Shown in pieces: positions 5,794 through 31,518 of a stretch of 64,000 nucleotides of DNA. Where the stretch lies: positions 124,001 through 188,000 of IMG/VR virus record IMGVR_UViG_3300017971_000185, one strand, 5' to 3'. Numbering within the stretch: position 1 is the first letter of the stretch; every line of letters begins with the position of its first letter. The notes under the pieces are model-generated. The model did not search any database, was not told where the DNA came from, and saw nothing but the letters and a program-made list of their open reading frames with translations. The position numbers and the translations under genes are program-made.

Positions 5794-5797
5794 AGAC

Positions 5798-8700: not shown

Positions 8701-9148
8701 CACTGTTGGAATCACTCCCGCATTGGTGAATATCCTGACGCCAGGTTTTCCTCCTCCTGTTCCTGGTAACTATGTTGGAATCCGTGTTGATGGTAATGTC
8801 GGGCCGCCAGCTCCAGCCCAATTCCGATGGATTACTGGTCGTTTGGCACCCTCGTCATGGCAAGCTGTGGATACGGGAATTATTCCAGAAGACAATGGCG
8901 ATGTCTTCTATCTGGTCATCGAAACATCACGGACAGGTCTGGTTGTCAAGATGGCATTGTTCAATGCAGACATGGATCGTTTAAGTGATATTTCGTTTCC
9001 AGCTTCCAATCCTGGGATCCCTCTCTTGACTGCGCCCATGGAAGTTGTGGCTGGTGTGTACAACACAATTGGAGGCGGGATGCACGGAGTTGCGCCTTGG
9101 TGGATCTCGTATCTGAACCGGATTGACCTTCCGTACCCCGTTTTCTAG
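5798..9148 (+). CDS. Large virion structural protein; possible receptor-binding protein with a swapped C-terminal module
   Basis: 1116 aa, beta-rich composition. Codon usage shifts toward T/A endings after about 8330. Confidence 0.6.
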   Translation: MVDFTDLDEEKLEELRKALAKAAATTTSRQPWQEHFERETSSTAARSVLAADIIRGFSGSWAASYNYGYGAGITANATNEARADTSEVPIPIRAKTTKLGRRGVPDIDFVPFNWRTNRFGYKGPALVGHPISYEVVGPTLKSPFCDWTWQVNLATGPNGGDELTMFTRPDGNPAVASTLADGYGADIPVFTIGDSAEPNGGLYVIITDDGANAGSIPAGETAMGARPEFIDTARYEIFRVASATTDTLELHPNKSLAPYFDLTGPFPRTIRAITVIKPYVTRLAAIPDSGPGPGQERVFAVVSPEVSASSDLYPPYDGGSGAWRQGGFDANPGETPSGVLGSADRYLGRMTMPIPIPLRKGLAQVDTTAAATPTNEIGLTFISDHPSTPIASSGADVGRILRVYDIQSEDDTDLTFGTPAATLGWFPCYDVEVGPPTGFVLGRTAEVAPETGHTYFGPGPFLQDAVGPKHDLVYTVHDPVSDLWQGPFNVDKVEACRLQNLIDPHEVARFEKQISQGVAGTSQPGGSSFSGPDKAIWDTSKRVVPAALDEAPNPGSLLDLGFRMVLYPAKNDGSDNPIPDFDKPIETRGNLVISPAVTEDQYLEVDYSAGLVRLSHEPPVVSNGGVGDIIPNGIIGGAGTTNPRLEVVLFAACVPFSMEESQLGTGARVVGRPGTDDIDLYSGRVRAGIDLANTNAAGTPTPPYVGASGVAPNPVEIVLDQIWTGPSTGVFEILDDTDTGASFGLWGYSETRDVSVLGRQVTALGGITSLPTTISDPGLGGSTPRVVVLRREVFFAEKSGSKDFGVDNATNDTAYGSAARAKTVRFDNATLLPELDGSVTVRQNQAPRFADWIGLLTASTIVDIVGPPATYKLSQNGVFEDTIYEDTGNPTGGPSQAILWPTLGHQEGPILVFPATNPAGDYSGFLTKASRIRLDQVCRLVFKFGLVHEVVAGEMVAYIGLGEGELFNTVGITPALVNILTPGFPPPVPGNYVGIRVDGNVGPPAPAQFRWITGRLAPSSWQAVDTGIIPEDNGDVFYLVIETSRTGLVVKMALFNADMDRLSDISFPASNPGIPLLTAPMEVVAGVYNTIGGGMHGVAPWWISYLNRIDLPYPVF

Positions 9149-9170
9149 GCTCCCAGGGCCCATTTTCCAT

Positions 9171-9177
9171 CCTATAG
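9171..9177 (+). promoter_or_regulatory. CCTATAG intergenic motif (candidate late promoter); related copies at 25913, 50400, 53588, 54861, 58257
   Basis: Recurs in short intergenic gaps, 26-57 nt upstream of a start codon in five of six cases. The motif is short, so it also occurs by chance. Confidence 0.35.
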
Positions 9178-9227
9178 GAGCGCACTTGTAGGACAGCTTG
9201 CGCTCTGGCGCAGGTATCGTGATTTCG

Positions 9228-10019
9228 ATGCGCATCCTAGTCGATCGGGCAACAAACGAGATCCTTCAAGTCGAGAAGGTTCCTTCCGAGGGCGAGACGG
9301 TTCCGCTCAATGGGAAGTACATTCTTCCGACGCCCGAGGGAGTCACGGTTCACGTCGATTCGGATTCGTTCGTTTTGCCTTCCTCCGATCCTGGGTCGGT
9401 TGTTGCGCAAGCCTACGCAGGACTACTTGCTCAATTTCCGCAGTACGAGAACGTCTTGTATAATCCTCTCTTGCTGGATACGGATGTTGACGATCTGGAT
9501 CTGACCGGGTTGTTCATCGATCCAGACACGAGCGACGAATTCACGACGCGCGCACAGATGGGCCGTGGAACGGGAGGCCCTTGGACTTCTGGGCAAGCGC
9601 CGATCAATACGGCGATGCTGGAAGCCAACGGGGTCACGTCTCCAACGCGGCCGGGGCTCTTGATCACGGACACCATCGACATCAGCCCCTTCACTCTGGA
9701 CCCTTTCGGGATTCCGGTAGGCACCGATGAGTTTGTCGTCTACTGGTACATCTACGAATGTGAAACCACTGAAGACATTCACTCCGACTTTGGCGCACAA
9801 GCAGGAGTGAACAATCCGGCGTTTCGCAACGTGATCGAGACGGACCAGGAGCCGGCCGATCTCCAGGTCTACATCAGCATCAACGACGGCACGACTTGGG
9901 TCGAAGTCCAGCGGCTTCTTCCCGTGGCGTTCTGCAACAAAGGGAAACTGATACGTCTCGCGTTTCGCAACAACGGCACCACGAAGGTCTATCTAGCTGC
10001 GTATGCCATCCTTTTCTGA
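9228..10019 (+). CDS. Virion structural protein (hypothetical)
   Basis: ATG at 9228 (MRILVDR) preferred over TTG 9198; lies inside the structural module. Confidence 0.6.
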   Translation: MRILVDRATNEILQVEKVPSEGETVPLNGKYILPTPEGVTVHVDSDSFVLPSSDPGSVVAQAYAGLLAQFPQYENVLYNPLLLDTDVDDLDLTGLFIDPDTSDEFTTRAQMGRGTGGPWTSGQAPINTAMLEANGVTSPTRPGLLITDTIDISPFTLDPFGIPVGTDEFVVYWYIYECETTEDIHSDFGAQAGVNNPAFRNVIETDQEPADLQVYISINDGTTWVEVQRLLPVAFCNKGKLIRLAFRNNGTTKVYLAAYAILF

Positions 10020-10038
10020 TGGGCCGCGGAGTTGAGCC

Positions 10039-13000
10039 ATGACAACAGATTTCGGACCCGGAGTTTCTCGCACCCTTGAGGCGTTGGCGCGTCAGTTTCA
10101 GATCACTGTTTTCCAGGCTGGAAAACCGCCGCTGGACTCAGAGATTAATCTGCTCCAGCAGGCTGACTCTGAGGCATTTCAGCAGTTTGTCCGCAGCCAG
10201 ATCCACTCAGGGTTTTTCCTCGATCCAACGCGTCCTCAGGATGACTTCGTAACCGATCCTCTCAACAGCAATCAGTTTCGTTTCGGTCAGCAGAAGCGCG
10301 ATGACAATGGTGCGGTAGAGGAGCTAGCTCCGATCGTCTGGGCGAACGTCAACGGGATGATCATTCCGGTGGTGGGGACGGCCAACACCGAGGCCGGGGC
10401 CACGGACAACATCGTTACCCTCAATCCGCCGCCCGACTCCGATACTCGGATCGATTTCATCTTCCTAGAGGCGTGGCGCGTCCTGGTTGCTCCCAACCCT
10501 TCGCCTGACAACAAGCCCGCGGCAGACAAGATCTGGAAGTACGGCAACGTCGAGTACGGACAGACCAACATCGATGATGATCTGATCGATCCCGCGATTG
10601 GGTTTGAGACGACGGAGCGCGTCCAGATTCAGTATCGCATTCGCGTCGTTGGAGAGGGCTCGGGAGCTGGTGTGAGCCCGGCGCTGGATGTGTACCCGGA
10701 TGGTCTGGATGACCCCAATGTCCGCGCTCAGGGGCCTTTGAGCACCCCGAGCACGCAGGCATACGCCGTCTGGACCAACATGCGTGAGGAGCTAGGAGAT
10801 CCTAGCTTGTGGCGTGCGGGGAACGGAAATCCGACCAACGACTTCGGGACGATAGACGGCTACATCTATGCGATCCCCATCTGCGCGATCTTCCGGCGCA
10901 ACAATCAGCCGTTCGTGGCGGTCAACCTATCGGGAAATCCGAACCAAAACGGAGCTTTCAATCGGAATCCATCTGCTGCGCTTCTGACGAATCCGCGGGA
11001 AGGGGCCAAGCTGCTCACGCAGATGACTTTGGTCAACGACATGGCGGCGGCGCAATTCACCCTGGATACGGACATCGAAGTAGACAATCTCATCGGTTCT
11101 GGGTTCGATGACTCCAACCACACACTTTCACAGGTGTTCATGGTCATCGACAATGAGGTCATCGGGATCTCTTCCATCGACACGACCGTATCTCCTGCTA
11201 CTGTTCGTGTTCCTGCCGGTGGTCGTGGTCGTTGGGGGACTGACCCGTTGTTCCACGGTGGCCGTGAGCTACCTGGCAATGTCGTGGGGTCGGGAACGCC
11301 GGTCTACTTCTTCAACACGAGACCTGGAAGCATCGGGAAGTACGCTGACGAGATTCACGAAGACGATTTCCTCGACATGCGACGGGGCGTCAACCTGGGC
11401 GATTGGGATTACGAGCGCCTGATCTTGCACAACGTGTCGGCTCTCATGCGCAACCGACTGCGCTCTACGTGGAAGCAGTCGGGTGTTCCTGGCGGAGATA
11501 CGGAGGGAGTCTTGGTTCAAGAGGTTGACTATCTCGACCAAGACGGCGCTACTCCCAACCCGAACGGGACGGAAGCCCTGGACGGCCCGGATGGTATCCG
11601 TGAGATCTGGAGCGATGCCGCTACCATCCAGACACGTGTCACGTCGTTGCTGGACAACGATGGCACGATGAGCAGTGGTTTCATCCAGACCTTCGACGAC
11701 TTGACTTTCTGGGGTGCCGGTGCGGACTTCAAGCCAGCGGGCTTCATGAACAACTTGAACAACACGACGCCCGGCTTCATGAACGGGACGACTATCTTCA
11801 TGTACATCGGTGGAGATAGCGGCAGTGTTGGCGCACGAAAGACGTTCCGTGACGGCACGACTCGTGCGGTTCGCTTCATCAATCCCAAGGAATTCTGGAA
11901 GGCTGCGGACGCCTCGACTTCCGAAGTGGGAATGCAGCATCCCGTGACGCTTCTGTGGACGAGCACGGATCAAGCGAACGCGGGCGTGCAGACGGCCGGT
12001 GCCGGGCTCCAGGCTCTCATTCCAGCAGGACCGGGTGAGACGCCCTCCGAGCATCCAGGGGCCATGTATCCTCTTCGCTCGTTGGATTTCGAGAAGCCCT
12101 TTATCGTTCTCGGAGGGGTCGTCAACAGCGTTCTCAATCTCACGGGCATCGATCCGACCGCCGACTTGCACGATAACAGCACCGATCCGGGCACGATTCC
12201 GGCAGGCGAGGGAGAGATCGAGCTTACGGGCTTTGACTTCGACGCGGCAGGGGACTGGTACAGCCTGACAAGCAGCGGCGACTTTGCCAACGATCCGAGC
12301 TTGGTCGTGTATCCGTTGGTCCGTGGCTCGCGAACCTTGTACGACATGCTCACTGCGGGCGGCAAGGATGAAACGGGATCGTCCTCTGAGCTTTACCTCA
12401 TCATGTATGGGGATGATCAGAGCACGCAGAACAATGGAGCCTTCCAGGTCATCGGCGCTGGAACGGTTGGCTACACGACCAAGACCACGGGCGCGGTCAA
12501 TCGTTTGCGTGTACGATTCTTGAGCGAAGGGGTCACGCTGTTCGATGTGACTTCGACCGGCACCCTGTCGGCCGAGGGGCGCTCCATGGAGCACAACGCT
12601 GAGGATGGCGAGGGCTCTGCTTCTGGTCCGGCGGCGATGACCATTACGTTGACGGACATCGAAGCGGTTGCTGGCGGCGGCGCAAATCCGTGGAATGCGG
12701 CCAACATCAACCCGTTGACCGCTCCCGGCAAGACTCTGGAGGAACCGTACAACTACAAGTGTCTCGTCAACATGACGTTGCTCTATCACCCTGGGCGTGG
12801 AGGAATGGCGCGGGTTGCTGACAAGATCGAACGGGTGACGATGCAGAGCCCTCCGGCTCAGATCCTACAGCAGACAGGGGTTGCTCTGGATTCGACATTC
12901 CCGGCTGCTACGGGAGCGCCAGGGAATCCACCCGAGGCAAACTTCACGAAGGTTCACATCCAAACGTGGAATCGCCTTCCGAGCCTCGGGCTCGATGCCC

Positions 13001-15657
13001 CGACAGCACCAGCTTACGGTGGCAACGTCGTTCTGAATTCCGAGATTACGCGTGACACGGAGGCTTTCTTCGATCGTGGCTCCAAATCGTTGCTGTTCCG
13101 TCCGTTCCAAGATCTGAGCATGACCATGCAGGGTGTCACGACGGATGTTCCGCAGACACTCTTTGGTCCCAGCGGCTACCCGAACCCGGCTCTCATCCCG
13201 AACGGATGGGATGGTCCAAAGGACGATGCTCAGATCTTCACTGCGGGTCTCAAGATGGGCTACGCGGTGCCGCATCAGTGGATGCCACGATTCGGTCGGC
13301 AAGACATTCCCTACTACCAGGACAAAGGCCCGGCATACGGGATTGGAAGGTTCTTGGATGGAATCAGCCATCTGTTCACGGATGGAACGGATGTCACCAA
13401 TCCGGTCTTCTACGTCATCGGTGGAGCGGACAACCAGTCTGGCGGTAACTTGGTCACACGAATGTTGCTCCAGACGGGCACGACTTCAGGTTTCAAGTAC
13501 GGTCAGTATGGAACGATCACGGGACCGACGACTCCAGCGTACCAGGGTCGTTTGACCAGCACGATTGGTACGGGAACGCCCGAAGCGGCTGAGGTCACGA
13601 GCTATCTCGCGAGTGTCACGTCGAGCGACTTCGGCAAGGGATTGACCGGCATCCAATTCCCGCCCTACCTTGGGATGGCTCGCCTCTACGGTGTCTACGA
13701 TCGACGTGACTTCGTGGCAAAGGGTGGCGTCACTTACGACACGGATCGGGTGACTCCTCTAGCGAGCAACGCGGTCAACCTGTTGCGTCGTGACGCACGC
13801 AAGCAGACTCTCTTCTTGTGTGAGGATGGTGCCTACGATCTCACGGGTGTCCGGGGCGATCACACGTACATCATTCCGTTCGATGCCATTGACATCAACA
13901 AGTCTCCGTCGTACATCGCTGGCGAAACGCCCGAGGATCTGGAGTACGTGGTCGAGTTTACGTGCTTCGGTTTCGCCCGCGGTTGGGTCACTGAGAACAA
14001 CTTTGTCATGGCTCGACGCCACAACGGCGAAGGAACGCTCGTCTCCGACACGGACAATCCCGAGCTAGAGAATCTCCGCATGACCATTCCTCATGCGGCT
14101 CCTGAGTCGAGCGTGTACGTCGCCTATGAGCGGACTGTCTACCAGGGTGACCCATACATGACTCGTGCGGGTGCGACTCGGACGACTTCGGACTACGAAC
14201 ACACCTACGGGCAGATCGCTCAGTCGGATGCCTATGGGCTCAATACGAGCATCCAGCAATTTGATGCCGCTGGAGTGCAGATTCCCGAGCGGCCCAATGC
14301 ACGTTCGTTCCAGGTACTCGCGTCCCTGGACTTCTACACGACGCTGGGAAGCGGGAACATCGGTGGAGCGCTCTATCCGGGCACCGAGACGGACGTGTGC
14401 TACACGGAGGACACCCCGATCGCTTCGACGCGGACTCCTCCGTTGGTAGATACGCCTGCGTTCCGTGTGCTTCCCAGGGCGTTCTCGGAGGGACAGAAAG
14501 AGAACGTCAGCCGGGCAAGACTCGATCTGCGCATCGATGGCAACAACGCTACGTTCAACTTCGGCACATCACACGTCGAGATCAGAAAGCTCGACGGGTC
14601 ACTGATTCTTTTCACGGCATTCAACGGTGTCACGGTTCAGCCTGATGAGTTTGATGCGTCTTCGCCGGATGAGGTGGTCATTGCAAAGGAGTTGACGGCC
14701 AAGATCAACGCACGGACGGAGCTACTCGATACGCTGGTAGCTCAGAACGATCGCGATTCACAGGTCATTCATCTGATTGCACGCCCGGTGGGTGAAGAGG
14801 GCAACGGCATCCGGGTGTCCATCAACGACACCACGAATTTCACGTTGCTCGTGCCCACGACGGGTGAAGAGACCGTCGATGCCGTGATCACTTCCGACTT
14901 CATGTCGGGCGGCATGGATTTGAGGATGAACGCGGGCAACGGCGGCACTAAGCTGGACTTGTCGGGCATGATCGAACGATTCCCTCTGGGGATTCTGGCG
15001 AGAGACCAGGACTTCATCGGAGAGAATCCTCTGGGAGACACGGCGAGTGCTGTCCAGACGACTCTGGGCGGCATCCGGCCCAATCAGCAGTTGCTACCCC
15101 TGACGGAGAGCGGTGGAGAGGAATTCACACCGTTCACGGGTGGACCGGGAGAGCTAGCCGGACAAGGCGACGGTGGAATCCTTCAATACGAAGCGTACAC
15201 GGACACGACTCCGGGCGGATCGAGGAAGTATCGTATCTTCCGTGGCGGTGGTTCGGTGTTCGTGCTCAGTGGCAAGAACCCCGGTGGTCCGATCGATTGG
15301 GTGAGCGGGGATCTGGCGGGAGCGTTGCAGCCTGTTCTCAAGGGAGGGTTGCTCGCCTGCAAGGCACTCCTTGTTCGGAATTTCGAGGAGGTTGCTTTTG
15401 CTACGGAGGACCAGACGACAACGGGCGATGAGATCCAGATGGTGGTTCTGACGCACGGCATCTTGGGTGACGGCAACGTGACGCAAGAAGGTGTCGAGAT
15501 AGACGGCATCATTTCGCCCACGGGATATGGAGAGGGGCTCACGGCGTCCGATCGCTACAGGCTCAGCGGAAAGCCGATGTATACGGGTAGGGTGCGTGTG
15601 ACTCCAGACCCGGCAACGATTCCTCTGGCTGTGTATCCTGGAAGAGATAGCGAGTAG
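10039..15657 (+). CDS. Very large virion structural protein (1872 aa), paralog of 2..2569
   Basis: Shared motifs TTERVQIQYRIRV, GTIDGYIYAIPICAIFRRN, YADEIHEDDFLDMRR; identical 17-nt stretch at 50-66 and 10630-10646. Confidence 0.7.
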   Translation: MTTDFGPGVSRTLEALARQFQITVFQAGKPPLDSEINLLQQADSEAFQQFVRSQIHSGFFLDPTRPQDDFVTDPLNSNQFRFGQQKRDDNGAVEELAPIVWANVNGMIIPVVGTANTEAGATDNIVTLNPPPDSDTRIDFIFLEAWRVLVAPNPSPDNKPAADKIWKYGNVEYGQTNIDDDLIDPAIGFETTERVQIQYRIRVVGEGSGAGVSPALDVYPDGLDDPNVRAQGPLSTPSTQAYAVWTNMREELGDPSLWRAGNGNPTNDFGTIDGYIYAIPICAIFRRNNQPFVAVNLSGNPNQNGAFNRNPSAALLTNPREGAKLLTQMTLVNDMAAAQFTLDTDIEVDNLIGSGFDDSNHTLSQVFMVIDNEVIGISSIDTTVSPATVRVPAGGRGRWGTDPLFHGGRELPGNVVGSGTPVYFFNTRPGSIGKYADEIHEDDFLDMRRGVNLGDWDYERLILHNVSALMRNRLRSTWKQSGVPGGDTEGVLVQEVDYLDQDGATPNPNGTEALDGPDGIREIWSDAATIQTRVTSLLDNDGTMSSGFIQTFDDLTFWGAGADFKPAGFMNNLNNTTPGFMNGTTIFMYIGGDSGSVGARKTFRDGTTRAVRFINPKEFWKAADASTSEVGMQHPVTLLWTSTDQANAGVQTAGAGLQALIPAGPGETPSEHPGAMYPLRSLDFEKPFIVLGGVVNSVLNLTGIDPTADLHDNSTDPGTIPAGEGEIELTGFDFDAAGDWYSLTSSGDFANDPSLVVYPLVRGSRTLYDMLTAGGKDETGSSSELYLIMYGDDQSTQNNGAFQVIGAGTVGYTTKTTGAVNRLRVRFLSEGVTLFDVTSTGTLSAEGRSMEHNAEDGEGSASGPAAMTITLTDIEAVAGGGANPWNAANINPLTAPGKTLEEPYNYKCLVNMTLLYHPGRGGMARVADKIERVTMQSPPAQILQQTGVALDSTFPAATGAPGNPPEANFTKVHIQTWNRLPSLGLDAPTAPAYGGNVVLNSEITRDTEAFFDRGSKSLLFRPFQDLSMTMQGVTTDVPQTLFGPSGYPNPALIPNGWDGPKDDAQIFTAGLKMGYAVPHQWMPRFGRQDIPYYQDKGPAYGIGRFLDGISHLFTDGTDVTNPVFYVIGGADNQSGGNLVTRMLLQTGTTSGFKYGQYGTITGPTTPAYQGRLTSTIGTGTPEAAEVTSYLASVTSSDFGKGLTGIQFPPYLGMARLYGVYDRRDFVAKGGVTYDTDRVTPLASNAVNLLRRDARKQTLFLCEDGAYDLTGVRGDHTYIIPFDAIDINKSPSYIAGETPEDLEYVVEFTCFGFARGWVTENNFVMARRHNGEGTLVSDTDNPELENLRMTIPHAAPESSVYVAYERTVYQGDPYMTRAGATRTTSDYEHTYGQIAQSDAYGLNTSIQQFDAAGVQIPERPNARSFQVLASLDFYTTLGSGNIGGALYPGTETDVCYTEDTPIASTRTPPLVDTPAFRVLPRAFSEGQKENVSRARLDLRIDGNNATFNFGTSHVEIRKLDGSLILFTAFNGVTVQPDEFDASSPDEVVIAKELTAKINARTELLDTLVAQNDRDSQVIHLIARPVGEEGNGIRVSINDTTNFTLLVPTTGEETVDAVITSDFMSGGMDLRMNAGNGGTKLDLSGMIERFPLGILARDQDFIGENPLGDTASAVQTTLGGIRPNQQLLPLTESGGEEFTPFTGGPGELAGQGDGGILQYEAYTDTTPGGSRKYRIFRGGGSVFVLSGKNPGGPIDWVSGDLAGALQPVLKGGLLACKALLVRNFEEVAFATEDQTTTGDEIQMVVLTHGILGDGNVTQEGVEIDGIISPTGYGEGLTASDRYRLSGKPMYTGRVRVTPDPATIPLAVYPGRDSE

Positions 15658-16730: not shown

Positions 16731-16759
16731 GTAAACTTCTGAGGGAATGTCGCGTAGAG
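16731..16759 (+). promoter_or_regulatory. ECF-sigma-like phage promoter
   Basis: GTAAAC-N15-GCGTAGAG, intergenic; same spacing as five other copies. Confidence 0.8.
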
Positions 16760-17977: not shown

Positions 17978-18006
17978 GTTAACTTTTCCGCCGATTTGGC
18001 GTAGAG
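17978..18006 (+). promoter_or_regulatory. ECF-sigma-like phage promoter (drives the PARP gene)
   Basis: GTTAAC-N15-GCGTAGAG in the intergenic gap. Confidence 0.75.
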
Positions 18007-18024
18007 CACCACACGAGAGGAACC

Positions 18025-19722
18025 ATGCCACGAAAGCTCGGACGTAAGGAATTTCCCTCTGCCCACAGCGCCGACGACTTCACCTACCAGGGTCGTCCCG
18101 CGAAGGACCAGGACGACTTCGGCAGCGACGTTGGGCTCGCTGACATGAAGTGCGTCAACCAGTTTGGCAGCAACAACAACAAGTACTACCACGCTGGAGT
18201 GGTGAAGGCGTCGGACGGTTCGTGGTGGGTCTACTTGGAGTGGGGTCGCGTCAAGTCAGGCAAGTCATGGAACGGAGGGTTCACGGGACAGGACTTCCAG
18301 TTTTGGGCGTGTACGTCGGAGAGCGAAGCTCGCGAGGCTTTCGAGAAGCAGTGCCGCAGCAAGAACATCAAGCGGCTGGAGCAGAAGGACGGCATCTGGG
18401 TTGGTCGGAAGGGCAAGGATGGTTACGTCGTCCAGAAACTCGCCACTCGTGAGAACGGGCTGCCCGATGCCTACACGATCAAGGATGCAAGCGGCGTTTC
18501 TGGCGAGAAGAAAGCCGCCAAGAAGAAGGCCACCAAGAAGACCGCGAAAGCGAGACCAACGCAGAGCTACCATCCGCAGGAAGTCAAGCTCGTACAGGAT
18601 CTCGTTGGCGGTACTCAGACATACGTGCAGCGAGCCGTCACCGAATCCGGTGGCGTGACTCCGACGCTCGATGCCATCGAGGAGGTTCGGGATACGCTCA
18701 TTCCGAAGGCGATGAAGCACATCGCTCGCGTGTCCAAGAACACGCCGCAGGGCGCGATGGCTCAGGCAGCCTACGATCACAGGCTGGCCGTTGCTTGCAC
18801 GAAGGACAAGAAGCTACAGGAGCTTTCCAACTACGTGGCGTCTTTGGTACCGCGACCAGACCCAGGGCGGTCGGCGGACGCAGAAACGCGAGCACTGGCT
18901 ACGGTGTTGTCGTCGGGCAACATTCTCACTCTACAGCAGGATCTCGATACGTTCGTGTCTGCGCTGGAGAATGAGGATTTCGACGTGGCCGATCAGAGGC
19001 AAGTCGTGGGCGTCGATGTGGACGCTCGCCTGAATGCGCAGGTTCGTTGGCTCGATCCCAAGGGCAAGATGGGCAAGTGGGTCGAGGCTACCTTCTGTGC
19101 GATGAGCAACAATCGCCACAGCCATCTGCGTGGGCGGCTGGTGATCAAGAACATCTTTTCGGTGGTACGGCCAGACCGCGATGCCAAGTTTGTGGCCGCG
19201 GTCAAGAAGGTGGCGAAGGCACGGAAGGGCAACTTCAGTCACTTCGCGCGCATGCAGCCGAGGCGGCGGCAAGACCTGTCGGATCTCTCAGATTTGGCGG
19301 CGCAAGCCAATGTGTTTTTGGGCATCCATGGAACGCGCGCAGTCAACGTGGCTCCCATCGTCCAGACTGACTTGCGGTTGCCTCGATCACTGCCGGGTGC
19401 TCTGCTCACGGGAGCGGCTTTCGGCCACGGGATCTACGAAGCGACGGACTGGCGCAAGAGCCATGGCTACACGGGCCACTCTTCCTCCTATTGGGCGAGC
19501 GGCGGCACGATTCGAGGCCGGGGATGGTTCATGTTCCTTCAGGACGTGATCATGGGGCAGGCGTACATGTGTCGCTCGACGGGTTCGTGGTCCACGCCGC
19601 CGAACAAGTGCGACTCGGTTGCGGCCTATCCCGAGTTTTCCAGTGTCGTCAACGATGAGCACATCGTGTTCGATCCCCACTATCAGAGGATCAGGTACAT
19701 CATCGAGGGCGACATCAAGTGA
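18025..19722 (+). CDS. PARP1/2/3-like ADP-ribosyltransferase: WGR domain, helical regulatory-like domain, ART catalytic domain
   Basis: WGR: NNNKYY...VYLEWGRV. Catalytic: LGIHGT (His 19327), TGAAFGHGIY (Tyr 19435), NDEHIVFD..Q.RIRYII (Glu 19657). These match the PARP1 HGS / TGYMFGKGIY / NEYIVYD...LKYLL pattern. Confidence 0.9.
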   Translation: MPRKLGRKEFPSAHSADDFTYQGRPAKDQDDFGSDVGLADMKCVNQFGSNNNKYYHAGVVKASDGSWWVYLEWGRVKSGKSWNGGFTGQDFQFWACTSESEAREAFEKQCRSKNIKRLEQKDGIWVGRKGKDGYVVQKLATRENGLPDAYTIKDASGVSGEKKAAKKKATKKTAKARPTQSYHPQEVKLVQDLVGGTQTYVQRAVTESGGVTPTLDAIEEVRDTLIPKAMKHIARVSKNTPQGAMAQAAYDHRLAVACTKDKKLQELSNYVASLVPRPDPGRSADAETRALATVLSSGNILTLQQDLDTFVSALENEDFDVADQRQVVGVDVDARLNAQVRWLDPKGKMGKWVEATFCAMSNNRHSHLRGRLVIKNIFSVVRPDRDAKFVAAVKKVAKARKGNFSHFARMQPRRRQDLSDLSDLAAQANVFLGIHGTRAVNVAPIVQTDLRLPRSLPGALLTGAAFGHGIYEATDWRKSHGYTGHSSSYWASGGTIRGRGWFMFLQDVIMGQAYMCRSTGSWSTPPNKCDSVAAYPEFSSVVNDEHIVFDPHYQRIRYIIEGDIK

Positions 19723-20948
19723 TGCGCACGCACTCTGGCAGCCCAGCCAAGAAACTCTGCCAGGCTGAGGGTGTTCTTGGCGCGATTGCACGACGCACAG
19801 GATGGTACGACGTTATCGGGAACGTATCCTCGTGTGTTGTCTATGCGGTCGACTCCCAAAGCTGGGTTGTCTCCACAGTAGGCACAAGGAGAACGAAACA
19901 GAGCCACGCAAAAAGCGCTGTCGAGAGCGAATTCGTAGCCACGGTTGCTTGCGCTCCACTTGCATTTTCTGAGTCGCTTTCGCTCCGCAGGCGTGGGTGC
20001 AGAGGTCGAGGGCGAGACAACGGGGCTCCAGTCATTCAATGGTACAATTCGAGATATCCACTGAAGGAATTCTTTGACCGACTTGGTTCCTTTTGCGAGA
20101 TTGCAGGTTTTGCAGCAGGGTACGATGTTGTTTTTGACGTAGCCCAGACGATTGTCCAATCGGTCGATTCCGTTGCAGCGGTAGAAACCGTAGAGCGACG
20201 TTCTGCTCACAATTCGAGGTTTCGCCCCGCAGTAGTGGCACGTTTGTTTGAACAGGGTCTCAGCTTCAATGAGCGAGATCTCGAATGGCAGGTTCCGTTT
20301 GCGTGCGTTTTTGAGGTAACCGTAGAATACATTGTTGCGGACGGAGACTCCGAAAGGTTTGCGGGCAGTTTCATCGCGGAGGCAGCCACAACTGCGCGTT
20401 GTTCCTTTGTACAAGGTCGAAGACCCCACCAAAGTCTCTCTGCCGCAGTCGCACCGACAACGATAGGCCCAACCAGGGCCGGATTTGGGCCGGATTTTCT
20501 CAAGAACAGTGAGTCGCCCAAATCGGGTGCCGGACGGGATCGTCGGCGATCGAACACAGCCACAGCTTTTGACCGATCCCGAGCGAAGGCTCCCTGGGAG
20601 CACGACGGTTTCATTCCCACAGTCGCATCGGCAACGAAACGCCGTCTGGTGTTTTCCCGAAGCCGAGGTTTGGGTGACGGGCTTCAGAACTATGAGGTTT
20701 GCAAATCTTTTGCCAACGAGATCTGCTTTGCGGCTACAGCCGCAGCTTCGGGTTCGGGGAAGGTTGCCTCGTGTAACCCAGTGCTCTTTGCCACAATCGC
20801 ACCTGCACAAACACTGGGCAGGAAACGAACCTTTCTTTCCTTGAAACTCAGCAATGACTACGAGGTTTCCGTGACGTTGCCCAACCAATGTTCCCGGTCG
20901 GTCCTTCGGCAGTTGGCGCCCTCGGGTCTTTGCAACGCTGGGTTTCAT
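19683..20948 (-). mobile_element. Free-standing HNH homing endonuclease (MobE-like; 3x CxCDCG..SCGC repeats plus two CxYC..DRxDN..PCC..CN domains)
   Basis: Repeated G.RFG.L.V..CRCDCG..L..G..SCGC units and two GIDR(L/I)DN.GY...N(I/V)VP(C/S)C..CN units. Antisense to its neighbours; lower GC than flanks. Confidence 0.85.
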
Positions 20949-21070
20949 TCCGTTGTTGCAGATTATACCAGGGGAGACACTGATGAGCATTTTCCGGGTA
21001 GGCGGCGAAGCACGTGTGAACGAAGGGCGGAACGAATCGCCGGGGTGACGGGCGAGGAGATCAAGTGATG
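19714..21070. repeat. 11-bp direct repeat ATCAAGTGATG flanking the HNH insertion (19714-19724 and 21060-21070)
   Basis: Exact match read from the sequence at both ends. Confidence 0.8.
20962..20970 (-). promoter_or_regulatory. Extended -10 (TGnTATAAT) promoter of the HNH gene
   Basis: Minus strand TGGTATAAT, 13 nt upstream of ATG 20948. Confidence 0.65.
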
Positions 21071-21277
21071 TATCTCGACAAGAAAACGAGCGACAAGGAT
21101 CAGATGAAGAACCCGGCTCCCTTTGGGCCGGGCTTCTCGGAGGATCAGATCAAGGAGGCGGCGACGATGGAAGTGTGGGCAACGGGTTTCTCTGATCCTG
21201 GTCCCGATTACTGCGAGTTTCGGCTGTTCGATGCCGATGGCAAGCGTATTGCGACCCGGCGAGTAGACGGGTACTAG
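21068..21277 (+). CDS. Hypothetical protein (69 aa)
   Basis: GAGGAG RBS, TGATG start. Confidence 0.65.
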   Translation: MYLDKKTSDKDQMKNPAPFGPGFSEDQIKEAATMEVWATGFSDPGPDYCEFRLFDADGKRIATRRVDGY

Positions 21278-21348
21278 AAGGTTTGATTTTTGGCGTATTA
21301 TCCTCACAGACAACAACCAACTTGGGCCACGATCCAAGGAGAAAGAAA

Positions 21349-22158
21349 ATGACAAACGCAACCTCCACGAAGGAAGCAGTCAAGGACAGCGGAAACTGGC
21401 GCGATGCAGTGGTCGATATCGTCGGCTACTACACGTCCAACAACTTGTGCTTTTCGTCAGGCGAGATCGCCGCGGAGTTGAGAACGCATCGGACGGATCT
21501 CAGGTTTTCGGTCCTCAATCTGGGCGAGTACGTGCGCGACCTGTTCTACAACGGTGCGATCAACTACACCGACGATGACGGCGACAGTCAGCAGGCTGTC
21601 CAGGCATCAAGGACAACCTCGGGAACCGGCCGCACTCCGGCTGGGAGGCTCGTATTCGTGTACGGCCCAGAGGCGGCCGAAGCGAACGCTCACGACTTCG
21701 AGGTTGACATTCCCAATCCTGGGGCTCCGGCAACCGCTGCCGCCAGCCCGATCAAGCCGAAGGGCGGCTACCCGACCGCTGTCGATGGCGACGATGATGA
21801 GGATGACGACGGCACGGCCATGACGGCCAGCGACAAGCTGGGGTCAGGCGAGTTTCAGGCGACGGTGCATGTGGACAAGCGCCTGTGCATCACACGGCCG
21901 ATCTTCGACAAATTCATTCAGGCGTCGGGCAAGACGCTTCGTGGCGGCGACTCGGTGTACATCGTGCTGAGCGACGATGAAGCTCGTATCACTATCGATG
22001 ACCCGAACGATGATGACGCTGTGACCTACGATCTCAGCAAGGAGAGGGGTCGGGTGCTGTTCCGCCGCAAGAGCAATGAGTTTGCTCCCGGCGATCACTA
22101 CAAGGTCACAGTGGCGGCAGCGGCTTTGGTCGTTGATCTCAGCGCTCCGCTCGACTAG
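21349..22158 (+). CDS. Putative transcription regulator: N-terminal HTH-like region plus C-terminal tandem AbrB/MraZ-like swapped hairpins
   Basis: AAGGAG RBS; FSSGEIAAEL helix; VHVDKRLCITRPIF...LRGGDSVYIV and ERGRVLF...FAPGDHYKVTV resemble AbrB repeats. Confidence 0.45.
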   Translation: MTNATSTKEAVKDSGNWRDAVVDIVGYYTSNNLCFSSGEIAAELRTHRTDLRFSVLNLGEYVRDLFYNGAINYTDDDGDSQQAVQASRTTSGTGRTPAGRLVFVYGPEAAEANAHDFEVDIPNPGAPATAAASPIKPKGGYPTAVDGDDDEDDDGTAMTASDKLGSGEFQATVHVDKRLCITRPIFDKFIQASGKTLRGGDSVYIVLSDDEARITIDDPNDDDAVTYDLSKERGRVLFRRKSNEFAPGDHYKVTVAAAALVVDLSAPLD

Positions 22159-22200: not shown

Positions 22201-22318
22201 CACCTGACAAGCCGAACAACACCCGCAGCCGCGCCACGTGAAACGGGAGTCCTCGGCCCCTTGCCTTCCAGGGGGATTCCAGCGAGCCCGAGGAAGCGGG
22301 GGCGCGGGCTTTCAGGTG
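22201..22318 (+). ncRNA. Candidate structured non-coding RNA
   Basis: Nested stems: CACCTGA-C-AAGCC/GGCTT-TCAGGTG, CGCGCC/GGCGCG, TCCTCGG/CCGAGGA, CCCCT/AGGGG, plus crossing CCCGC/GCGGG, in a 193-nt intergenic gap. Confidence 0.45.
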
Positions 22319-22346
22319 TAAACTCCTCGGCTGATTTCGCGTAGAG
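22318..22346 (+). promoter_or_regulatory. ECF-sigma-like phage promoter
   Basis: GTAAAC-N15-GCGTAGAG, 5 nt before ATG 22352. Confidence 0.8.
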
Positions 22347-28559: not shown

Positions 28560-30100
28560 AGATTCTCCTCCGGTCGTGTTTCCTGGTTTCCCCGTCCGAT
28601 GACGAGGAGTTGTTCCAGCGAAACTACCTCGCGCTCCTGGCTTCCGATCTGGGATTCGAAACTCCAGAGGATGATCTGCTGTGGATGTTCATCAAGGACT
28701 TCTTCCAGCAGCACATGCATGTGCCGTCATTGGCAACGATTCGAGCCCACTTCGAACGCATCAAAGAGATGGAAGTGGTCGACCGGGTGGAGACGGTTGC
28801 CAATTTCAACCCGCTCACACGCGGTGACTTCGTTCGCCATCTGGAGGAGAAGGCAGAGGACCGTCGTAGTCGTCTGATTCTCGAATACGCCAAGACGATG
28901 GTGAAGATTGTCGAGACCGGGATAGAGGTCCGCGACGGGAAGAACAAGACGTTTCTCAAGGGTGCTGTCGATGCCTGCCGCTATTTCTCGGACCTGAGTC
29001 ATGGAATCCTCGCACCTACGCTTGGCGCGAGGATGTCTGGTGATCTGCTGGCCGACACGGTGGGTTTCAAGGAGCACTACGAGCGCGTGGAAGCCGACCC
29101 GGAGTATGGCATCGGGCTGTTCTCTGGGCTGGAGCAGATGGACAAGGTTATCGCCGGGGCAAAGAAGGGCGAGCTTTGGATCCACGCTGGCTTCACGGGC
29201 GCAATGAAAAGCTCACTTGCCTTGCATTGGGCCTACGTCCAAGCGATCTACTTCAAGCACACGGTCTTCTACTGCTCGCTGGAGATGCCTCTCATCCAGT
29301 GCCGCAACATTGTCCACACGATGCACTCGTTTCACGAGAAATTCCGTGAGGACCGCATCCGTCTGGGCATTCAGGCTCCGAGCAAGAAGCAGACCGATGG
29401 CACCGTGTTCCACTACGATCGGGGGCTCGACTACGAGAAGATCAAGAACGGCAAGCTGTCTCCGAATGAGAAAGTGTTTCTGATGGAGGTGGTCGAGCCG
29501 GACCTGGAGGATGCCTCCAACGTGTACGGAGACATCCACCTAGAAGGAGCCGACCCAGACAAGATCGACTACACCATCGTTGATCTGCGCACGAAGGCAG
29601 AGATTCAGTACGCGAAGCAGCCGTTCGATCTCATATTCATCGACCACATGGGGTTGATGGCTCCCCGGAAGCGGATGGGATCAACGACGGAGAATCTCAA
29701 TGAGGTCGTTCGCGATGTCAAGAAGATGGCTCTCGGTTTCAACCGCGGGATGGGCATTCCCATTGTTGCCTTGTGGCAGATTAGCCGACAAGGATGGCGA
29801 GAGGCAGCGAAGGCCGAGGGCAAGTACAATCTTACAACTTTAGCCTACGCGAACGAAACCGAGAGGAGCGCTGATGTTGTGACCGCTTCGTGGATTGATG
29901 ATGAGTTGAAGGCGCAGGGTCGGTTCTACATGCAGTGTCTCAAGAGCCGTGACACGGCACCGTTCGAACGATTTCCTGTGCGTGTGGAGTTTCACTGTCG
30001 TCGCTTGCTCACGGATCACGAAGGCATCGAGGACAGTGAGGAGGCCAAGCAGAAGCGCAACGAGGAAGTGGCCAACGAGCTAGACGAGTTGTTCGCATGA
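28556..30100 (+). CDS. dnaB: DnaB-like replicative helicase
   Basis: HAGFTGAMKS (Walker A variant), YCSLEM, IFIDHMGLM, LWQISR, ETERSADVV, CLKSRD. Confidence 0.88.
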   Translation: MKILLRSCFLVSPSDDEELFQRNYLALLASDLGFETPEDDLLWMFIKDFFQQHMHVPSLATIRAHFERIKEMEVVDRVETVANFNPLTRGDFVRHLEEKAEDRRSRLILEYAKTMVKIVETGIEVRDGKNKTFLKGAVDACRYFSDLSHGILAPTLGARMSGDLLADTVGFKEHYERVEADPEYGIGLFSGLEQMDKVIAGAKKGELWIHAGFTGAMKSSLALHWAYVQAIYFKHTVFYCSLEMPLIQCRNIVHTMHSFHEKFREDRIRLGIQAPSKKQTDGTVFHYDRGLDYEKIKNGKLSPNEKVFLMEVVEPDLEDASNVYGDIHLEGADPDKIDYTIVDLRTKAEIQYAKQPFDLIFIDHMGLMAPRKRMGSTTENLNEVVRDVKKMALGFNRGMGIPIVALWQISRQGWREAAKAEGKYNLTTLAYANETERSADVVTASWIDDELKAQGRFYMQCLKSRDTAPFERFPVRVEFHCRRLLTDHEGIEDSEEAKQKRNEEVANELDELFA

Positions 30101-30585: not shown

Positions 30586-30625
30586 GTGGGTTTACCGTGG
30601 GAGGCTTCCGTGCTACAACATTCCC

Positions 30626-31255: not shown

Positions 31256-31518
31256 TGACGATTCTCAAAGCAGACGGCACTGCGTACCGTGAGCCGGGAG
31301 AACCGTGCGATCATGGCATCACGTTCGATGAGGAAGAGGCGGAACGGATACTTGGAAACTGGGAGCCGCGCGACAGTACTGATTTCGTCATGGGCAATCC
31401 GGCCGCTGCGGAGGTTCGCAGACGATGGCCACGTCTGAATGGCCGGTGCCCTCTGGGCTGTGGTTACGTGGGCATCTACTACGCGAGTCCCGAGCACTAC
31501 ACCCTGGGAGACTGGTGA
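31255..31518 (+). CDS. Hypothetical protein
   Basis: GTG 31255 overlapping the HNH stop; CPLGCGY. Confidence 0.55.
   Translation: MTILKADGTAYREPGEPCDHGITFDEEEAERILGNWEPRDSTDFVMGNPAAAEVRRRWPRLNGRCPLGCGYVGIYYASPEHYTLGDW

What the first reader, a model, noticed from the sequence alone, without database searches (positions are those of the whole stretch)
18025..19722. Phage-encoded PARP with full eukaryote-like WGR-helical-catalytic architecture
Seen: WGR domain, Lys-rich linker, a helical region resembling the PARP regulatory domain (QEVKLVQDL...LQELSNYVASLVP) and an ART domain with an intact H-Y-E triad. Residues matching PARP1 acceptor-site positions differ (TGAAFG vs TGYMFG; VNDE vs LYNE; GIYEA vs GIYFA). 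Established: WGR senses DNA breaks in PARP1/2/3, PARP3 keeps H-Y-E but is a mono-transferase that can modify DNA ends, and PARP1-like genes are rare in bacteria. Inference: a DNA-break-activated ADP-ribosyltransferase that shields or marks phage DNA ends, modifies host proteins, or drains NAD+. It has its own ECF-type promoter. No eraser (PARG/macrodomain) is visible in this window.
Basis: partly seen in the sequence, partly recalled or inferred. Interest (0 to 1): 0.8.

Follow-up and report, generated by a model that had tools for sequence, protein, structure and literature searches.

The report
Huge-phage PARP with DNA-binding partner gene
A roughly half-megabase phage carries an intact PARP1/2/3-style enzyme (DNA-break sensor domain, helical brake, ADP-ribosyltransferase); that architecture is already annotated in other phages, but here it is inherited together with an undescribed DNA-binding-type partner gene that occupies the place a modification-removing enzyme holds in related lineages.

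Summary
ORF 18025-19722 (+, 565 aa) is intact, and a confident AlphaFold model superposes on human PARP1/PARP2 WGR-HD-ART chains (HD+ART Z about 27). W-G-R, H435, Y471, K478, Y482 and E545 are conserved across the family. The claimed promoter motif recurs at six plus-strand sites just upstream of start codons. No eraser domain was found in the window.

Two corrections lower the novelty. Phage PARPs with all three domains are already annotated (Klebsiella phage vB_KpM_FBKp34 gp111, Xanthomonas phage XacN1). This lineage is also common: 53-58% identical full-length copies sit in Nannocystaceae chromosomes and in many 0.2-0.6 Mb phage contigs.

ORF 21349-22158 (269 aa) has a winged-helix domain plus a tandem AbrB/MraZ-like domain and no Pfam, PHROG or PADLOC hit. 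It follows the PARP gene in 16 of 16 bacterial loci and lies within about 3 kb in 11 of 12 IMG/VR phage loci. The two proteins co-diverge (Mantel r 0.96). In the window an antisense HNH homing endonuclease splits the pair. Sister lineages carry ARH or PARG instead of the partner.

Best reading: a DNA-break-activated ADP-ribosyltransferase working with a DNA-binding regulator or substrate in the phage replication/repair module. Activity, targets and mono versus poly are untested.

The parts
17978..18003 (+). Promoter-like motif GTTAAC-N16-CGTA (family consensus GTAAACTT-N14-CGCGTAGAG), 21 nt upstream of the PARP start codon
   Evidence: 7 matches in the window against 0.98 expected, 0 of 100 shuffles reach 7. 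The six + strand copies all sit 6-22 nt before a + strand start codon.
18015..18022 (+). Ribosome-binding site GAGAGGAA
   Evidence: Read directly from the sequence.
18025..19722 (+). PARP gene, 565 aa, intact
   Evidence: ORF; Pfam PARP above cutoff; AF2 pLDDT 88; PARP1/2 structural matches.
18025..18474 (+). N-terminal extension plus WGR domain (aa 1-150; W73-G74-R75, K53, Y55, Y134)
   Evidence: Pfam WGR 19.1 bits here, and 43 of 60 relatives hit WGR. Aligns with the PARP1/2 WGR in full-chain Foldseek hits. Conservation.
18490..18570 (+). Lys-rich disordered linker (aa 156-182, 8 K of 27)
   Evidence: pLDDT under 50 at residues 160-166; composition; variable in relatives.
18571..19035 (+). 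Helical (HD, PARP regulatory) domain, aa ~183-337
   Evidence: Model 177-565 superposes on PARP1 661-1008 at Z ~27. PARP_reg Pfam hits in 7 of 60 aligned relatives, best E 7.7e-23.
19036..19719 (+). ART catalytic domain, aa ~338-565; H435 (19327-19329), Y471 (19435-19437), E545 (19657-19659)
   Evidence: Pfam PF00644; invariant H, G, Y, K, Y and E in 60 relatives; HMMER alignment to PARP2.
19683..20990 (-). HNH homing endonuclease (435 aa) inserted antisense between the PARP and partner genes; its 3' end overlaps the PARP 3' end by 40 nt. The + strand ORF 19719-21068 is its shadow.
   Evidence: PHROG HNH endonuclease E 1e-43. A 54% identical copy sits at the same position in L027/L036. Sister phages L023 and L024 lack it.
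21065..21277 (+). Small ORF (70 aa) of unknown function upstream of the partner gene
   Evidence: ORF. Found only in the identical copies of this phage, with no Pfam or PADLOC hit.
21349..22158 (+). Partner gene (269 aa from the ATG at 21349, RBS AAGGAG). Winged helix aa ~13-108 (21385-21672), acidic disordered linker, tandem AbrB/MraZ-like domain aa ~160-269 (21826-22155).
   Evidence: 40% identical to the gene directly after bacterial PARP homologues. Present in 16 of 16 bacterial and 11 of 12 IMG/VR phage loci. Mantel r 0.96 with PARP. AF2 pLDDT 87. Folds. Start and RBS.

Best explanation
The gene encodes a PARP1/2/3-type ADP-ribosyltransferase.

Shown:
- The domain order is WGR, Lys-rich linker, helical HD domain, ART domain, with every NAD+-site and catalytic residue conserved.
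- It is one half of a two-gene module. The other half is a protein with a winged-helix domain and a tandem AbrB/MraZ-like domain. The two are co-inherited in huge phages and in Nannocystaceae chromosomes.
- The PARP gene is transcribed from a promoter class shared with other genes of the window's replication/repair block, including the NAD-dependent ligase.

Inferred from what is established for PARP1-3 and for the Herpetosiphon and C. difficile enzymes: the WGR domain binds a nick or DNA end, this releases the HD brake, and the ART domain then uses NAD+ to ADP-ribosylate itself and nearby acceptors.

Inferred from linkage and folds: the partner is a DNA-bound regulator and/or the main acceptor of the enzyme. 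It gives the control that ARH or PARG erasers give in sister lineages. In the phage the pair most likely reports or manages breaks in replicating DNA, for example breaks made by host nucleases or by the phage's many homing endonucleases.

Whether the product is mono- or poly-ADP-ribose, and whether the acceptor is protein or DNA, is not decided. Replacement of the PARP1/2 acceptor-site Tyr by a near-invariant Asn (N543), and of Tyr-Met by Ala-Ala, leans towards mono or short chains.
For: Architecture and catalytic residues.

Partner linkage: it lies 3-149 nt downstream in 16 of 16 bacterial loci and is present in 11 of 12 IMG/VR phage loci. It is also present next to a 47% identical member and in L036/L038. 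Co-divergence is Mantel r 0.96, 0 of 2000 permutations.

Partner folds: winged helix Z ~5 against Fur/PadR/MarR-type regulators. MraZ/SpoVT-AbrB/MazE matches.

Sister lineages have erasers instead: PARG in L032, ARH plus NUDIX in L034, ARH in LR756511.1. They have no partner.

Stable, partly syntenic chromosomal position in Nannocystaceae.

Position among helicases, DnaB, NAD ligase, polymerase, UDG and UvrD. Shared promoter class.

DNA-dependent activity of bacterial WGR-PARPs: PMC5966428, PMC8120803.
Against: - No biochemical data exist for any member of this lineage.
- The window copy has Glu at the position after the catalytic Tyr (GIYEA), where relatives have an aromatic or hydrophobic residue. 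This could weaken NAD+ binding.
- The winged-helix match is modest (Z ~5). Its recognition helix is not notably basic (my reading of alignment A2).
- The AbrB half is missing in one bacterial subclade. Two phage homologue loci lack the partner within 6-10 kb.
- The eraser-versus-partner contrast rests on only three eraser-linked loci. Two further outgroup contigs were too short to judge.
- An eraser may exist in the unseen 87% of the genome.
Confidence: 0.6

Rival explanations
1. Conflict module. The PARP is a toxin-like effector that is switched on by foreign or broken DNA. It then drains NAD+ or modifies essential targets, as in abortive infection or superinfection exclusion. The AbrB/MazE-type partner is its antitoxin and autoregulator, as DarG is for DarT.
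For: - Effector-first two-gene layout with a partner that has a MazE/AbrB antitoxin-type fold.
- The partner evolves faster than the enzyme, 46% against 59% mean identity.
- The pair is shared between phages and bacteria.
- No eraser is nearby.
- Some bacterial neighbours are conflict genes, such as VgrG/DUF2169 and Imm11.
- Phages are known to carry toxin-antitoxin-type ARTs (PMC9503650).
Against: - No PADLOC hit for either protein.
- The bacterial copies are vertically inherited with partial synteny rather than scattered in islands.
- The conserved core of the partner is the winged helix, not the AbrB half, which one subclade has lost.
- The enzyme already carries its own HD brake.
- In the phage it sits in the replication/repair block and shares its promoter class with the ligase gene.
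Confidence: 0.25
2. Host-takeover enzyme. Like T4 Alt/ModA/ModB, the phage PARP modifies host proteins such as RNA polymerase or the translation machinery to redirect the cell. The partner would be an unrelated phage transcription factor.
For: Jumbo-phage ARTs, PARPs included, have been proposed to act this way (PMC7824862). The gene has its own promoter in a class shared with other phage genes.
Against: - The same enzyme-partner pair is kept in bacterial chromosomes, where there is no host to take over.
- The WGR and HD domains point to DNA-dependent control.
- It belongs to the H-Y-E clade, not the R-S-E clade of Alt/Mod.
- The co-divergence with the partner argues that the two are functionally tied.
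Confidence: 0.1
3. Catalytically weakened copy. In this particular phage the Phe-to-Glu change next to the catalytic Tyr leaves mainly a DNA-break-binding or scaffold protein.
For: E472 is unique among 60 aligned relatives, where F, W, H and L account for 53. The 89% identical relative has F.
Against: All other NAD+-site residues are intact. The position tolerates several residues in the family, including A and L. The same sequence is found in four independent metagenome contigs, so it is not a sequencing error and the gene is maintained.
Confidence: 0.05

Closest known systems
Human PARP1, PARP2 and PARP3 (WGR-HD-ART core)
   Same: Same order of three domains. The AF2 model aligns over the whole chain to PARP1/2 WGR-CAT bound to DNA breaks, and HD+ART matches at Z ~27. 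It keeps H-Y-E, Gly after His, the K903/S904/Y907 equivalents and the W-G-R motif (PARP1 numbering from my own knowledge).
   Different: Only 16-19% identity. There are no zinc fingers or BRCT domain. It has a ~45-residue conserved N-terminal extension and a Lys-rich linker between WGR and HD. The acceptor-site positions differ: Ala-Ala for Tyr-Met, and Asn for the Tyr before Asn-Glu. It has no HPF1, and its partner is a wHTH-AbrB protein.
Bacterial PARPs (Herpetosiphon aurantiacus HaPARP, Clostridioides difficile CdPARP and the 72-sequence set of PMC5966428)
   Same: WGR, a helical domain often missed by Pfam, and PARP_cat. HaPARP is DNA-activated, and both are PARP-inhibitor-sensitive in vitro (PMC5966428, PMC8120803).
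   Different: Those enzymes are ~430-450 aa and go with PARG, MacroD or ARH erasers. This lineage is 540-600 aa. It matches the shorter ~415-475-aa PARP proteins found, which I take to be those classical PARPs, only in the catalytic domain. It goes with the wHTH-AbrB partner, with no eraser within 6-10 kb.
Annotated phage PARPs: Klebsiella phage vB_KpM_FBKp34 gp111 (QQV91759.1) and Xanthomonas phage XacN1 ORF414 (BBA65562.1)
   Same: Phage-encoded, with WGR + PARP_reg + PARP confirmed by Pfam.
   Different: They are 423-428 aa, and only the last ~130 residues align with the window protein (36-39% identity). There is no partner homologue beside them.
DarT-DarG toxin-antitoxin system
   Same: A two-gene module with the ADP-ribosyltransferase first, acting in a DNA context and shared with mobile elements (PMC9503650, PMC9967889).
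   Different: DarT is a small ART without WGR or HD. DarG is a macrodomain eraser. The partner here has no hydrolase fold.
MraZ, AbrB/SpoVT and MazE swapped-hairpin DNA binders; Fur/PadR/MarR winged-helix regulators
   Same: The partner's C-terminal half matches MraZ/MazE-type tandem AbrB domains (prob 0.97-1.0, TM 0.50-0.55 by target). Its N-terminal half matches winged helices.
   Different: There is no sequence-level family membership (no Pfam hit). This domain combination and the invariant CFSSGE and RTPAG motifs are specific to this family.

Membership tests
PARP / ARTD family, PARP1-3-like (Pfam PF00644, H-Y-E clade) | ART fold with a Pfam PARP catalytic-domain score above the gathering threshold | tested here: met
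   39.5 bits against 26.7; 60 of 60 relatives hit; Z ~27 to PARP1/2/4 catalytic domains.
PARP / ARTD family, PARP1-3-like (Pfam PF00644, H-Y-E clade) | H-Y-E catalytic triad plus NAD+-site Gly, Ser/Lys and second Tyr | tested here: met
   H435, G436, Y471, K478, Y482 and E545 are invariant, and S479 is present in 56 of 60. Aligned to the PARP2 H, Y and E.
PARP / ARTD family, PARP1-3-like (Pfam PF00644, H-Y-E clade) | WGR domain N-terminal to the catalytic region | tested here: met
   Pfam is below cutoff for this sequence (19.1 against 22), but 43 of 60 relatives hit, best E 2.4e-16. W73-G74-R75 is conserved. The full chain aligns to PARP1/2 WGR-CAT.
PARP / ARTD family, PARP1-3-like (Pfam PF00644, H-Y-E clade) | Helical regulatory (HD, PARP_reg) domain between WGR and ART | tested here: met
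   No Pfam hit for this sequence. 7 of 60 aligned relatives hit PARP_reg, best E 7.7e-23. Model 177-565 superposes on PARP1 661-1008.
PARP / ARTD family, PARP1-3-like (Pfam PF00644, H-Y-E clade) | DNA-break-dependent activation | not testable with these tools
   Inferred only from the WGR-HD-ART arrangement and from HaPARP and PARP1-3 (PMC5966428).
PARP / ARTD family, PARP1-3-like (Pfam PF00644, H-Y-E clade) | Polymer (PAR) synthesis rather than mono-ADP-ribosylation | not testable with these tools
   E545 permits either. Acceptor-site positions differ from PARP1/2: A464-A465 and N543. This is a lead, not a test.
Bacterial PAR metabolism (PARP with PARG, MacroD or ARH) | Eraser gene linked to, or present with, the PARP | tested here: not met
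   No Macro, PARG, ARH or NADAR in about 59 window ORFs. None in 10 kb either side of three bacterial loci. No tblastn hit with PARG, ARH or NUDIX queries in any in-group locus. The rest of the ~497-kb genome was not seen.
Type II toxin-antitoxin or DarTG-like module | Tightly linked, co-inherited effector and neutraliser genes | tested here: met
   Adjacent in 16 of 16 bacterial loci, present in 11 of 12 phage loci, Mantel r 0.96.
Type II toxin-antitoxin or DarTG-like module | Partner with an antitoxin-type DNA-binding fold (AbrB/MazE) | tested here: inconclusive
   The fold is present, but the AbrB half is absent in L005, L007 and L017. The conserved core is the winged helix.
Type II toxin-antitoxin or DarTG-like module | Toxicity of the effector and its neutralisation by the partner; recognised defence family | tested here: inconclusive
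   No PADLOC match. Toxicity and neutralisation cannot be tested here.
T4 Alt/Mod-type host-takeover ARTs | R-S-E catalytic motif; head-packaged or MuF-fused | tested here: not met
   The enzyme is H-Y-E, and the gene lies in the replication block, not the head module.
ECF-sigma-type promoter | AAC at -35, about 16 nt spacer, CGT at -10, recurring upstream of genes | tested here: met
   The pattern is enriched 7 against 0.98, with constant spacing to start codons. The consensus shape is from my own knowledge of ECF promoters.
ECF-sigma-type promoter | A cognate ECF sigma factor that reads it | tested here: inconclusive
   No Sigma70_r2 or r4 hit among the window ORFs scanned. The rest of the genome and the host are unknown.

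The most novel reading that the evidence does not exclude
The PARP and its wHTH-AbrB partner form a self-contained DNA-break alarm. Break-activated ADP-ribosylation of the DNA-bound partner, or its release from DNA, switches gene expression or replication. This would be a viral and bacterial counterpart of eukaryotic PARP signalling in which a non-enzymatic DNA-binding protein, not an eraser, sets and resets the signal. The module would have been passed from huge phages to the ancestor of the marine Nannocystaceae.
Probability: 0.3. Interest if true: 0.75.

Novelty: new variant of a known kind. Interest (0 to 1): 0.5.

Why it matters
What bacterial and phage PARPs do in vivo is still open. The reviews note in-vitro activity for only two enzymes and no known physiological target (PMC8120803). 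A conserved, co-evolving partner of unknown family gives a concrete first candidate for the substrate or regulator. The contrast with ARH- or PARG-linked sister lineages gives a clear comparative experiment. The pair occurs in culturable Nannocystaceae (Enhygromyxa salina, Plesiocystis pacifica), so genetics is possible without the uncultured phage. The tree also bears on gene flow between huge phages and myxobacteria, and on the phage origin proposed for eukaryotic PARPs (PMC9503650).

Tried and rejected
1. The + strand ORF 19719-21068 (449 aa), and the '400-aa unknown' called between PARP and partner in L036/L027, were rejected as shadows of the antisense HNH endonuclease gene. The minus-strand ORF matches PHROG HNH at E 1e-43 and is 54% identical between phages.
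2. A third cassette gene. The 393-aa neighbour after the partner in L002 is conserved only among Nannocystaceae genomes, at varying distance, and is absent from phages. It is a synteny marker, not a component.
3. A weak tblastn hit of a partner sequence to the gene upstream of the Klebsiella phage PARP (E 6e-4) was rejected by hhalign (probability 2%) and by the partner HMM.
4. The small ORF 21065-21277 is not conserved outside identical copies of this phage.
5. PADLOC, NCBIfam and the ESM Atlas feature search gave nothing useful for the PARP or the partner.
6. The wide alignment A3 was too divergent for locus scanning. The closer alignment A4 worked.
7. Upstream regions of phage homologues do not align, so the promoter is not conserved across phages.
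9. Contexts of P0208 and P0212 were too short downstream to score for eraser or partner.
10. No tRNA genes in the window.
Full report
OBSERVATION.

The ORF at 18025-19722 (+) is real, intact and 565 aa long. An RBS, GAGAGGAA, lies at 18015-18022. Pfam finds the PARP catalytic domain above its curated cutoff (39.5 against 26.7 bits). It finds a WGR match just below cutoff (19.1 against 22) and no PARP_reg. NCBIfam finds nothing. Direct sequence comparison with solved structures gives only weak PARP2/PARP1 hits (E about 0.01). Those hits fall in three collinear pieces: the WGR strand NNKYY...WGR, the H-G to Y-x-A segment, and the catalytic Glu.

Family-level evidence settles the architecture.
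- I aligned 60 relatives spanning 22-89% identity (A3). Scanned one by one, 60 of 60 hit PARP, 43 of 60 hit WGR (best E 2.4e-16) and 7 of 60 hit PARP_reg (best E 7.7e-23).
- An AlphaFold2 model built on that alignment is confident (pLDDT 88.1, pTM 0.83).
- Foldseek's best matches are human PARP1 and PARP2 WGR-CAT chains bound to DNA breaks (E 1e-19 to 1e-17, about 575 aligned columns).
- A second aligner places model residues ~177-565 on PARP1 661-1008, the HD plus ART domains, at Z ~27.

So the helical region is the PARP regulatory domain, not merely something that resembles it.

H435, G436, Y471, K478, Y482 and E545 are invariant in all 60 sequences, and W73-G74-R75 is nearly so. The linker (aa 156-182) has 8 Lys in 27 residues and is disordered in the model. 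Against PARP2 they read TGAAFG versus TGYMFG, GIYEA versus GIYFA and NDE versus YNE. One correction: N-D/N-E is family-wide, but the Glu in GIYEA is peculiar to this phage. Relatives have F 37, W 11, H 3 and L 2 of 60, and the 89% identical relative has F.

IS IT A PHAGE?

Yes, as far as sequence can show.
- The identical PARP locus lies on IMG/VR contigs of 372 and 497 kb.
- The window carries GroEL, SF2 and DnaB helicases, a DnaG zinc ribbon, several DNA methyltransferases, an NAD-dependent ligase, a 1399-aa DNA polymerase, UDG, an intein-bearing UvrD helicase, a holin-like protein and several homing endonucleases.
- The 1872-aa ORF is 43% identical over its full length to a protein of a 485-kb uncultured phage. 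It also partly resembles Bacillus phage G gp420 and a jumbo-phage tail fibre.

THE PROMOTER CLAIM.

GTTAAC-N16-CGTA at 17978-18003 is one of 7 matches to that pattern (one mismatch allowed), against 0.98 expected. None of 100 shuffles reached 7. The six plus-strand copies share a longer consensus, GTAAACTT-N14-CGCGTAGAG. Each lies 6-22 nt upstream of a plus-strand start codon, and the distance is 21 nt for both the PARP gene and the NAD-dependent ligase gene. This is a real promoter class with the AAC-N16-CGT shape typical of ECF sigma factors (the shape is from my own knowledge). No sigma factor was seen in the window. A sigma-70-type scan found nothing near the gene.

Protein searches showed that this is not a rare gene. 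One search listed 120 full-length homologues. P0002 to P0008 are 73-89% identical. More than 100 others are 51-61% identical, including chromosomal genes of Pseudenhygromyxa, Enhygromyxa salina and a Nannocystaceae isolate. The exhaustive search found 631 representatives at E below 0.001.

In three bacterial loci the PARP gene is followed on the same strand, after 20-77 nt, by a 250-260-aa gene with no Pfam hit. The window ORF at 21283-22158 is 40% identical to these, with invariant motifs such as CFSSGE, RTPAG, VFVY and ERGRV. Its true start is the ATG at 21349 behind AAGGAG. That agrees with the ~270-aa length of its closest relatives.

Linkage across the fetched loci:
- The partner lies 3-149 nt downstream of the PARP gene in 16 of 16 bacterial loci with a complete PARP gene.
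- It is present in 11 of 12 IMG/VR phage loci, with gaps of 27-3203 nt.
- It is also present next to a 47% identical member and in further phage-like contigs.
- Pairwise identities of the two proteins across 23 loci correlate at r = 0.96 (Mantel test, 0 of 2000 permutations). The partner diverges faster, with mean identity 46% against 59%. This shows inheritance as a unit. It does not prove physical interaction.

WHAT THE PARTNER IS.

Its AF2 model is confident (pLDDT 87, pTM 0.80).
- Residues ~13-108 form a winged helix. The best matches are Fur, PadR and MarR-type regulators at Z ~5, which is modest but covers the whole domain.
- An acidic disordered linker follows.
- Residues ~160-269 match MraZ, SpoVT-AbrB and MazE-antitoxin-type tandem swapped-hairpin domains. 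Foldseek gives probability 0.97 against MraZ bound to its promoter, AFDB clusters give probability 1.0, and Atlas TM by target is 0.50-0.55.

Both are DNA-binding-type folds, and neither is a hydrolase fold. Pfam, PHROG-style context, PADLOC and the Atlas feature search give no family. One Myxococcota subclade (L005, L007, L017) keeps only the winged-helix half. The winged helix, with its conserved wing loop R-x-T-x-G-x-G-R-T-P-A-G, is therefore the core of the partner.

THE INTERRUPTION.

In the window the pair is split by a 435-aa HNH homing endonuclease on the minus strand (19683-20990, PHROG E 1e-43). Its 3' end overlaps the PARP 3' end by 40 nt. A 54% identical endonuclease sits at the same place and in the same orientation in another huge phage (L027/L036/L037), whose PARP is only 53% identical. 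The sister phages L023 and L024 lack it. The long plus-strand ORF over the same DNA (19719-21068) is a shadow ORF. Public gene calls picked that shadow in L036.

ERASERS.

I found no Macro, PARG, ARH or NADAR domain among about 59 window ORFs. None is recorded within 10 kb of three bacterial loci. PARG, ARH and NUDIX queries gave no tblastn hit in any in-group locus.

More distant relatives of the same family differ. A 42% identical member lies 2.4 kb from a microbial-type PARG. A 36% identical member on a phage-like contig lies near an ADP-ribosylglycohydrolase and a Nudt16-like NUDIX. The 595-kb phage LR756511.1, whose PARP is 33% identical over its full length, has an ARH about 4 kb downstream. 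None of these has the partner. So the family splits into eraser-linked lineages and a partner-linked clade. The eraser side rests on only three loci. Two further outgroup contigs were too short to judge. 87% of this phage's genome was not seen.

EVOLUTION.

In a maximum-likelihood tree the partner-linked clade has SH-aLRT 100. Within it the huge-phage sequences are deep and paraphyletic. The Myxococcota sequences form shallower groups nested among them. An AU test rejects a single in-group phage clade (p = 0.009) but not a single bacterial clade (p = 0.34). The groups were named after the tree had been seen, and backbone supports are 87-94, so I treat the direction (phage to an ancestor of the marine Nannocystaceae) as likely, not shown.

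The bacterial loci share partial synteny, including a 393-aa neighbour absent from phages. The bacterial copies therefore behave as stable chromosomal genes rather than island cargo.

MECHANISM.

Shown: a WGR-HD-ART enzyme with a complete NAD+ site; a co-inherited DNA-binding-type partner; a location and promoter class shared with replication/repair genes.

Inferred from established PARP1-3 biochemistry and from HaPARP (PMC5966428, PMC8120803): WGR binding to a nick or DNA end unfolds the HD brake and lets NAD+ in, and the enzyme then modifies itself and nearby acceptors.

Inferred from linkage, folds and the eraser contrast: the partner is the regulator and/or the main acceptor. It supplies the control that ARH or PARG supply elsewhere.

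My best reading (0.6) is a DNA-break sensing and signalling pair that acts on replicating phage DNA. The product type is open. The acceptor-site Tyr of PARP1/2 is replaced by a near-invariant Asn, and Tyr-Met by Ala-Ala. That leans towards mono or short chains but is only a lead.

Rivals:
- A toxin-antitoxin-like conflict module (0.25). It is favoured by the MazE/AbrB fold, the gene layout and the faster-evolving partner. It is disfavoured by vertical inheritance with synteny, the absence of a PADLOC match, loss of the AbrB half in one subclade, and the enzyme's own brake.
- A host-takeover ART (0.1). It is disfavoured because the same pair lives in bacterial chromosomes.
- A weakened enzyme because of E472 (0.05).

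COMPARISON WITH WHAT IS KNOWN, AND NOVELTY.

The title claim, a phage PARP with the full eukaryote-like architecture, is already known as an annotation. Klebsiella phage vB_KpM_FBKp34 gp111 is annotated with WGR, PARP_reg and PARP domains, and XacN1 ORF414 has them too. I confirmed both with Pfam. Phage PARPs are discussed in PMC7824862 and PMC9503650. Those proteins are 423-428 aa, align with the window protein only in the last ~130 residues and have no partner beside them.

What I did not find described in the library searched is this longer lineage of 540-600 aa. It is shared by huge phages and Nannocystaceae, and it is tied to a wHTH-AbrB protein. I therefore file it as a new variant of a known kind and score interest at 0.5. 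The enzyme is ordinary for its family. The partner linkage is a concrete, testable handle on the unresolved question of what prokaryotic and phage PARPs do.

Noticed in passing
window 16731-16758, 17978-18003, 22318-22343, 35193-35220, 36049-36076, 52199-52226 (+): A recurrent promoter-like motif, GTAAACTT-N14-CGCGTAGAG, lies 6-22 nt upstream of plus-strand start codons, including the PARP and NAD-dependent ligase genes. It is ECF-like in shape. No sigma factor was seen in the window.
   Followed up: partly
window 19683-20990 (-); L027 about 11641-12942 (-); L036/L037 about 6653-7954 (-): An HNH homing endonuclease is inserted antisense between the PARP and partner genes in two divergent huge phages (54% identical). 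It is absent from their sister phages L023 and L024. Public gene calls on L036 picked the plus-strand shadow ORF instead.
   Followed up: yes
window 36096-39199 (+): The NAD-dependent DNA ligase appears split. The adenylation/OB part is at 36096-37268 and the Zn-finger/HhH/BRCT part at 38111-39199. An ORF with a TnsA-like endonuclease domain (37195-38178) lies between them. This may be a mobile insertion, an intron or intein, or a true two-piece ligase.
   Followed up: no
window 59053-63999 (+): The UvrD-type helicase ORF, which runs off the window end, contains an intein with a LAGLIDADG endonuclease domain (aa ~376-764).
   Followed up: no
window 2-15654 (+): Five consecutive ORFs (855, 1073, 1116, 273 and 1872 aa) have no Pfam or PHROG hit. 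The 1872-aa one is 43% identical to a protein of the 485-kb uncultured phage LR745208.1 and partly resembles phage G gp420 and a jumbo-phage tail fibre. They are probably virion or tail proteins.
   Followed up: partly
L005 7594-7990, L007 7668-8060, L017 7791-8186: In one Myxococcota subclade the partner is only ~130 aa: the winged-helix half alone, with no AbrB half anywhere in the locus. It is followed by other unannotated genes of 321 and 401 aa.
   Followed up: partly
L038 3034-3939 and 8001-8822: A phage-like contig family (up to 536 kb) has a short 301-aa PARP-domain gene about 4 kb from a partner homologue, with PhoH and small ORFs between them. This may be a truncated or split PARP.
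   Followed up: no
L004 11807-12778; L034 11899-12885 and 1420-1977; L032 1995-2882 (-): Partner-less relatives of the PARP lie near classical erasers. There is an ARH in the 595-kb phage LR756511.1, an ARH plus a Nudt16-like NUDIX on another phage-like contig, and a microbial PARG on a third contig.
   Followed up: partly
window 19438-19440 (codon E472): Glu follows the catalytic Tyr (GIYEA) where 53 of 60 relatives have F, W, H or L. The same residue is found in four independent metagenome contigs, so it is not a sequencing error. Its effect on NAD+ binding is unknown.
   Followed up: partly
window 30097-35196 and 48088-48987 (+); 50439-51032 (-): The window is dense in DNA-modification and repair genes: MT-A70 and several N6/N4 methyltransferases, a further HNH_3 endonuclease (30626-31252), a SWIM zinc-finger protein (35639-36049) and a family-4-type UDG on the minus strand.
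   Followed up: no
L001 12847-19040: In Pseudenhygromyxa the cassette is followed by DUF2169 proteins and a VgrG-like (Phage_GPD/Gp5) gene, which is a type VI secretion-type neighbourhood. This neighbourhood is not conserved in other genera.
   Followed up: no
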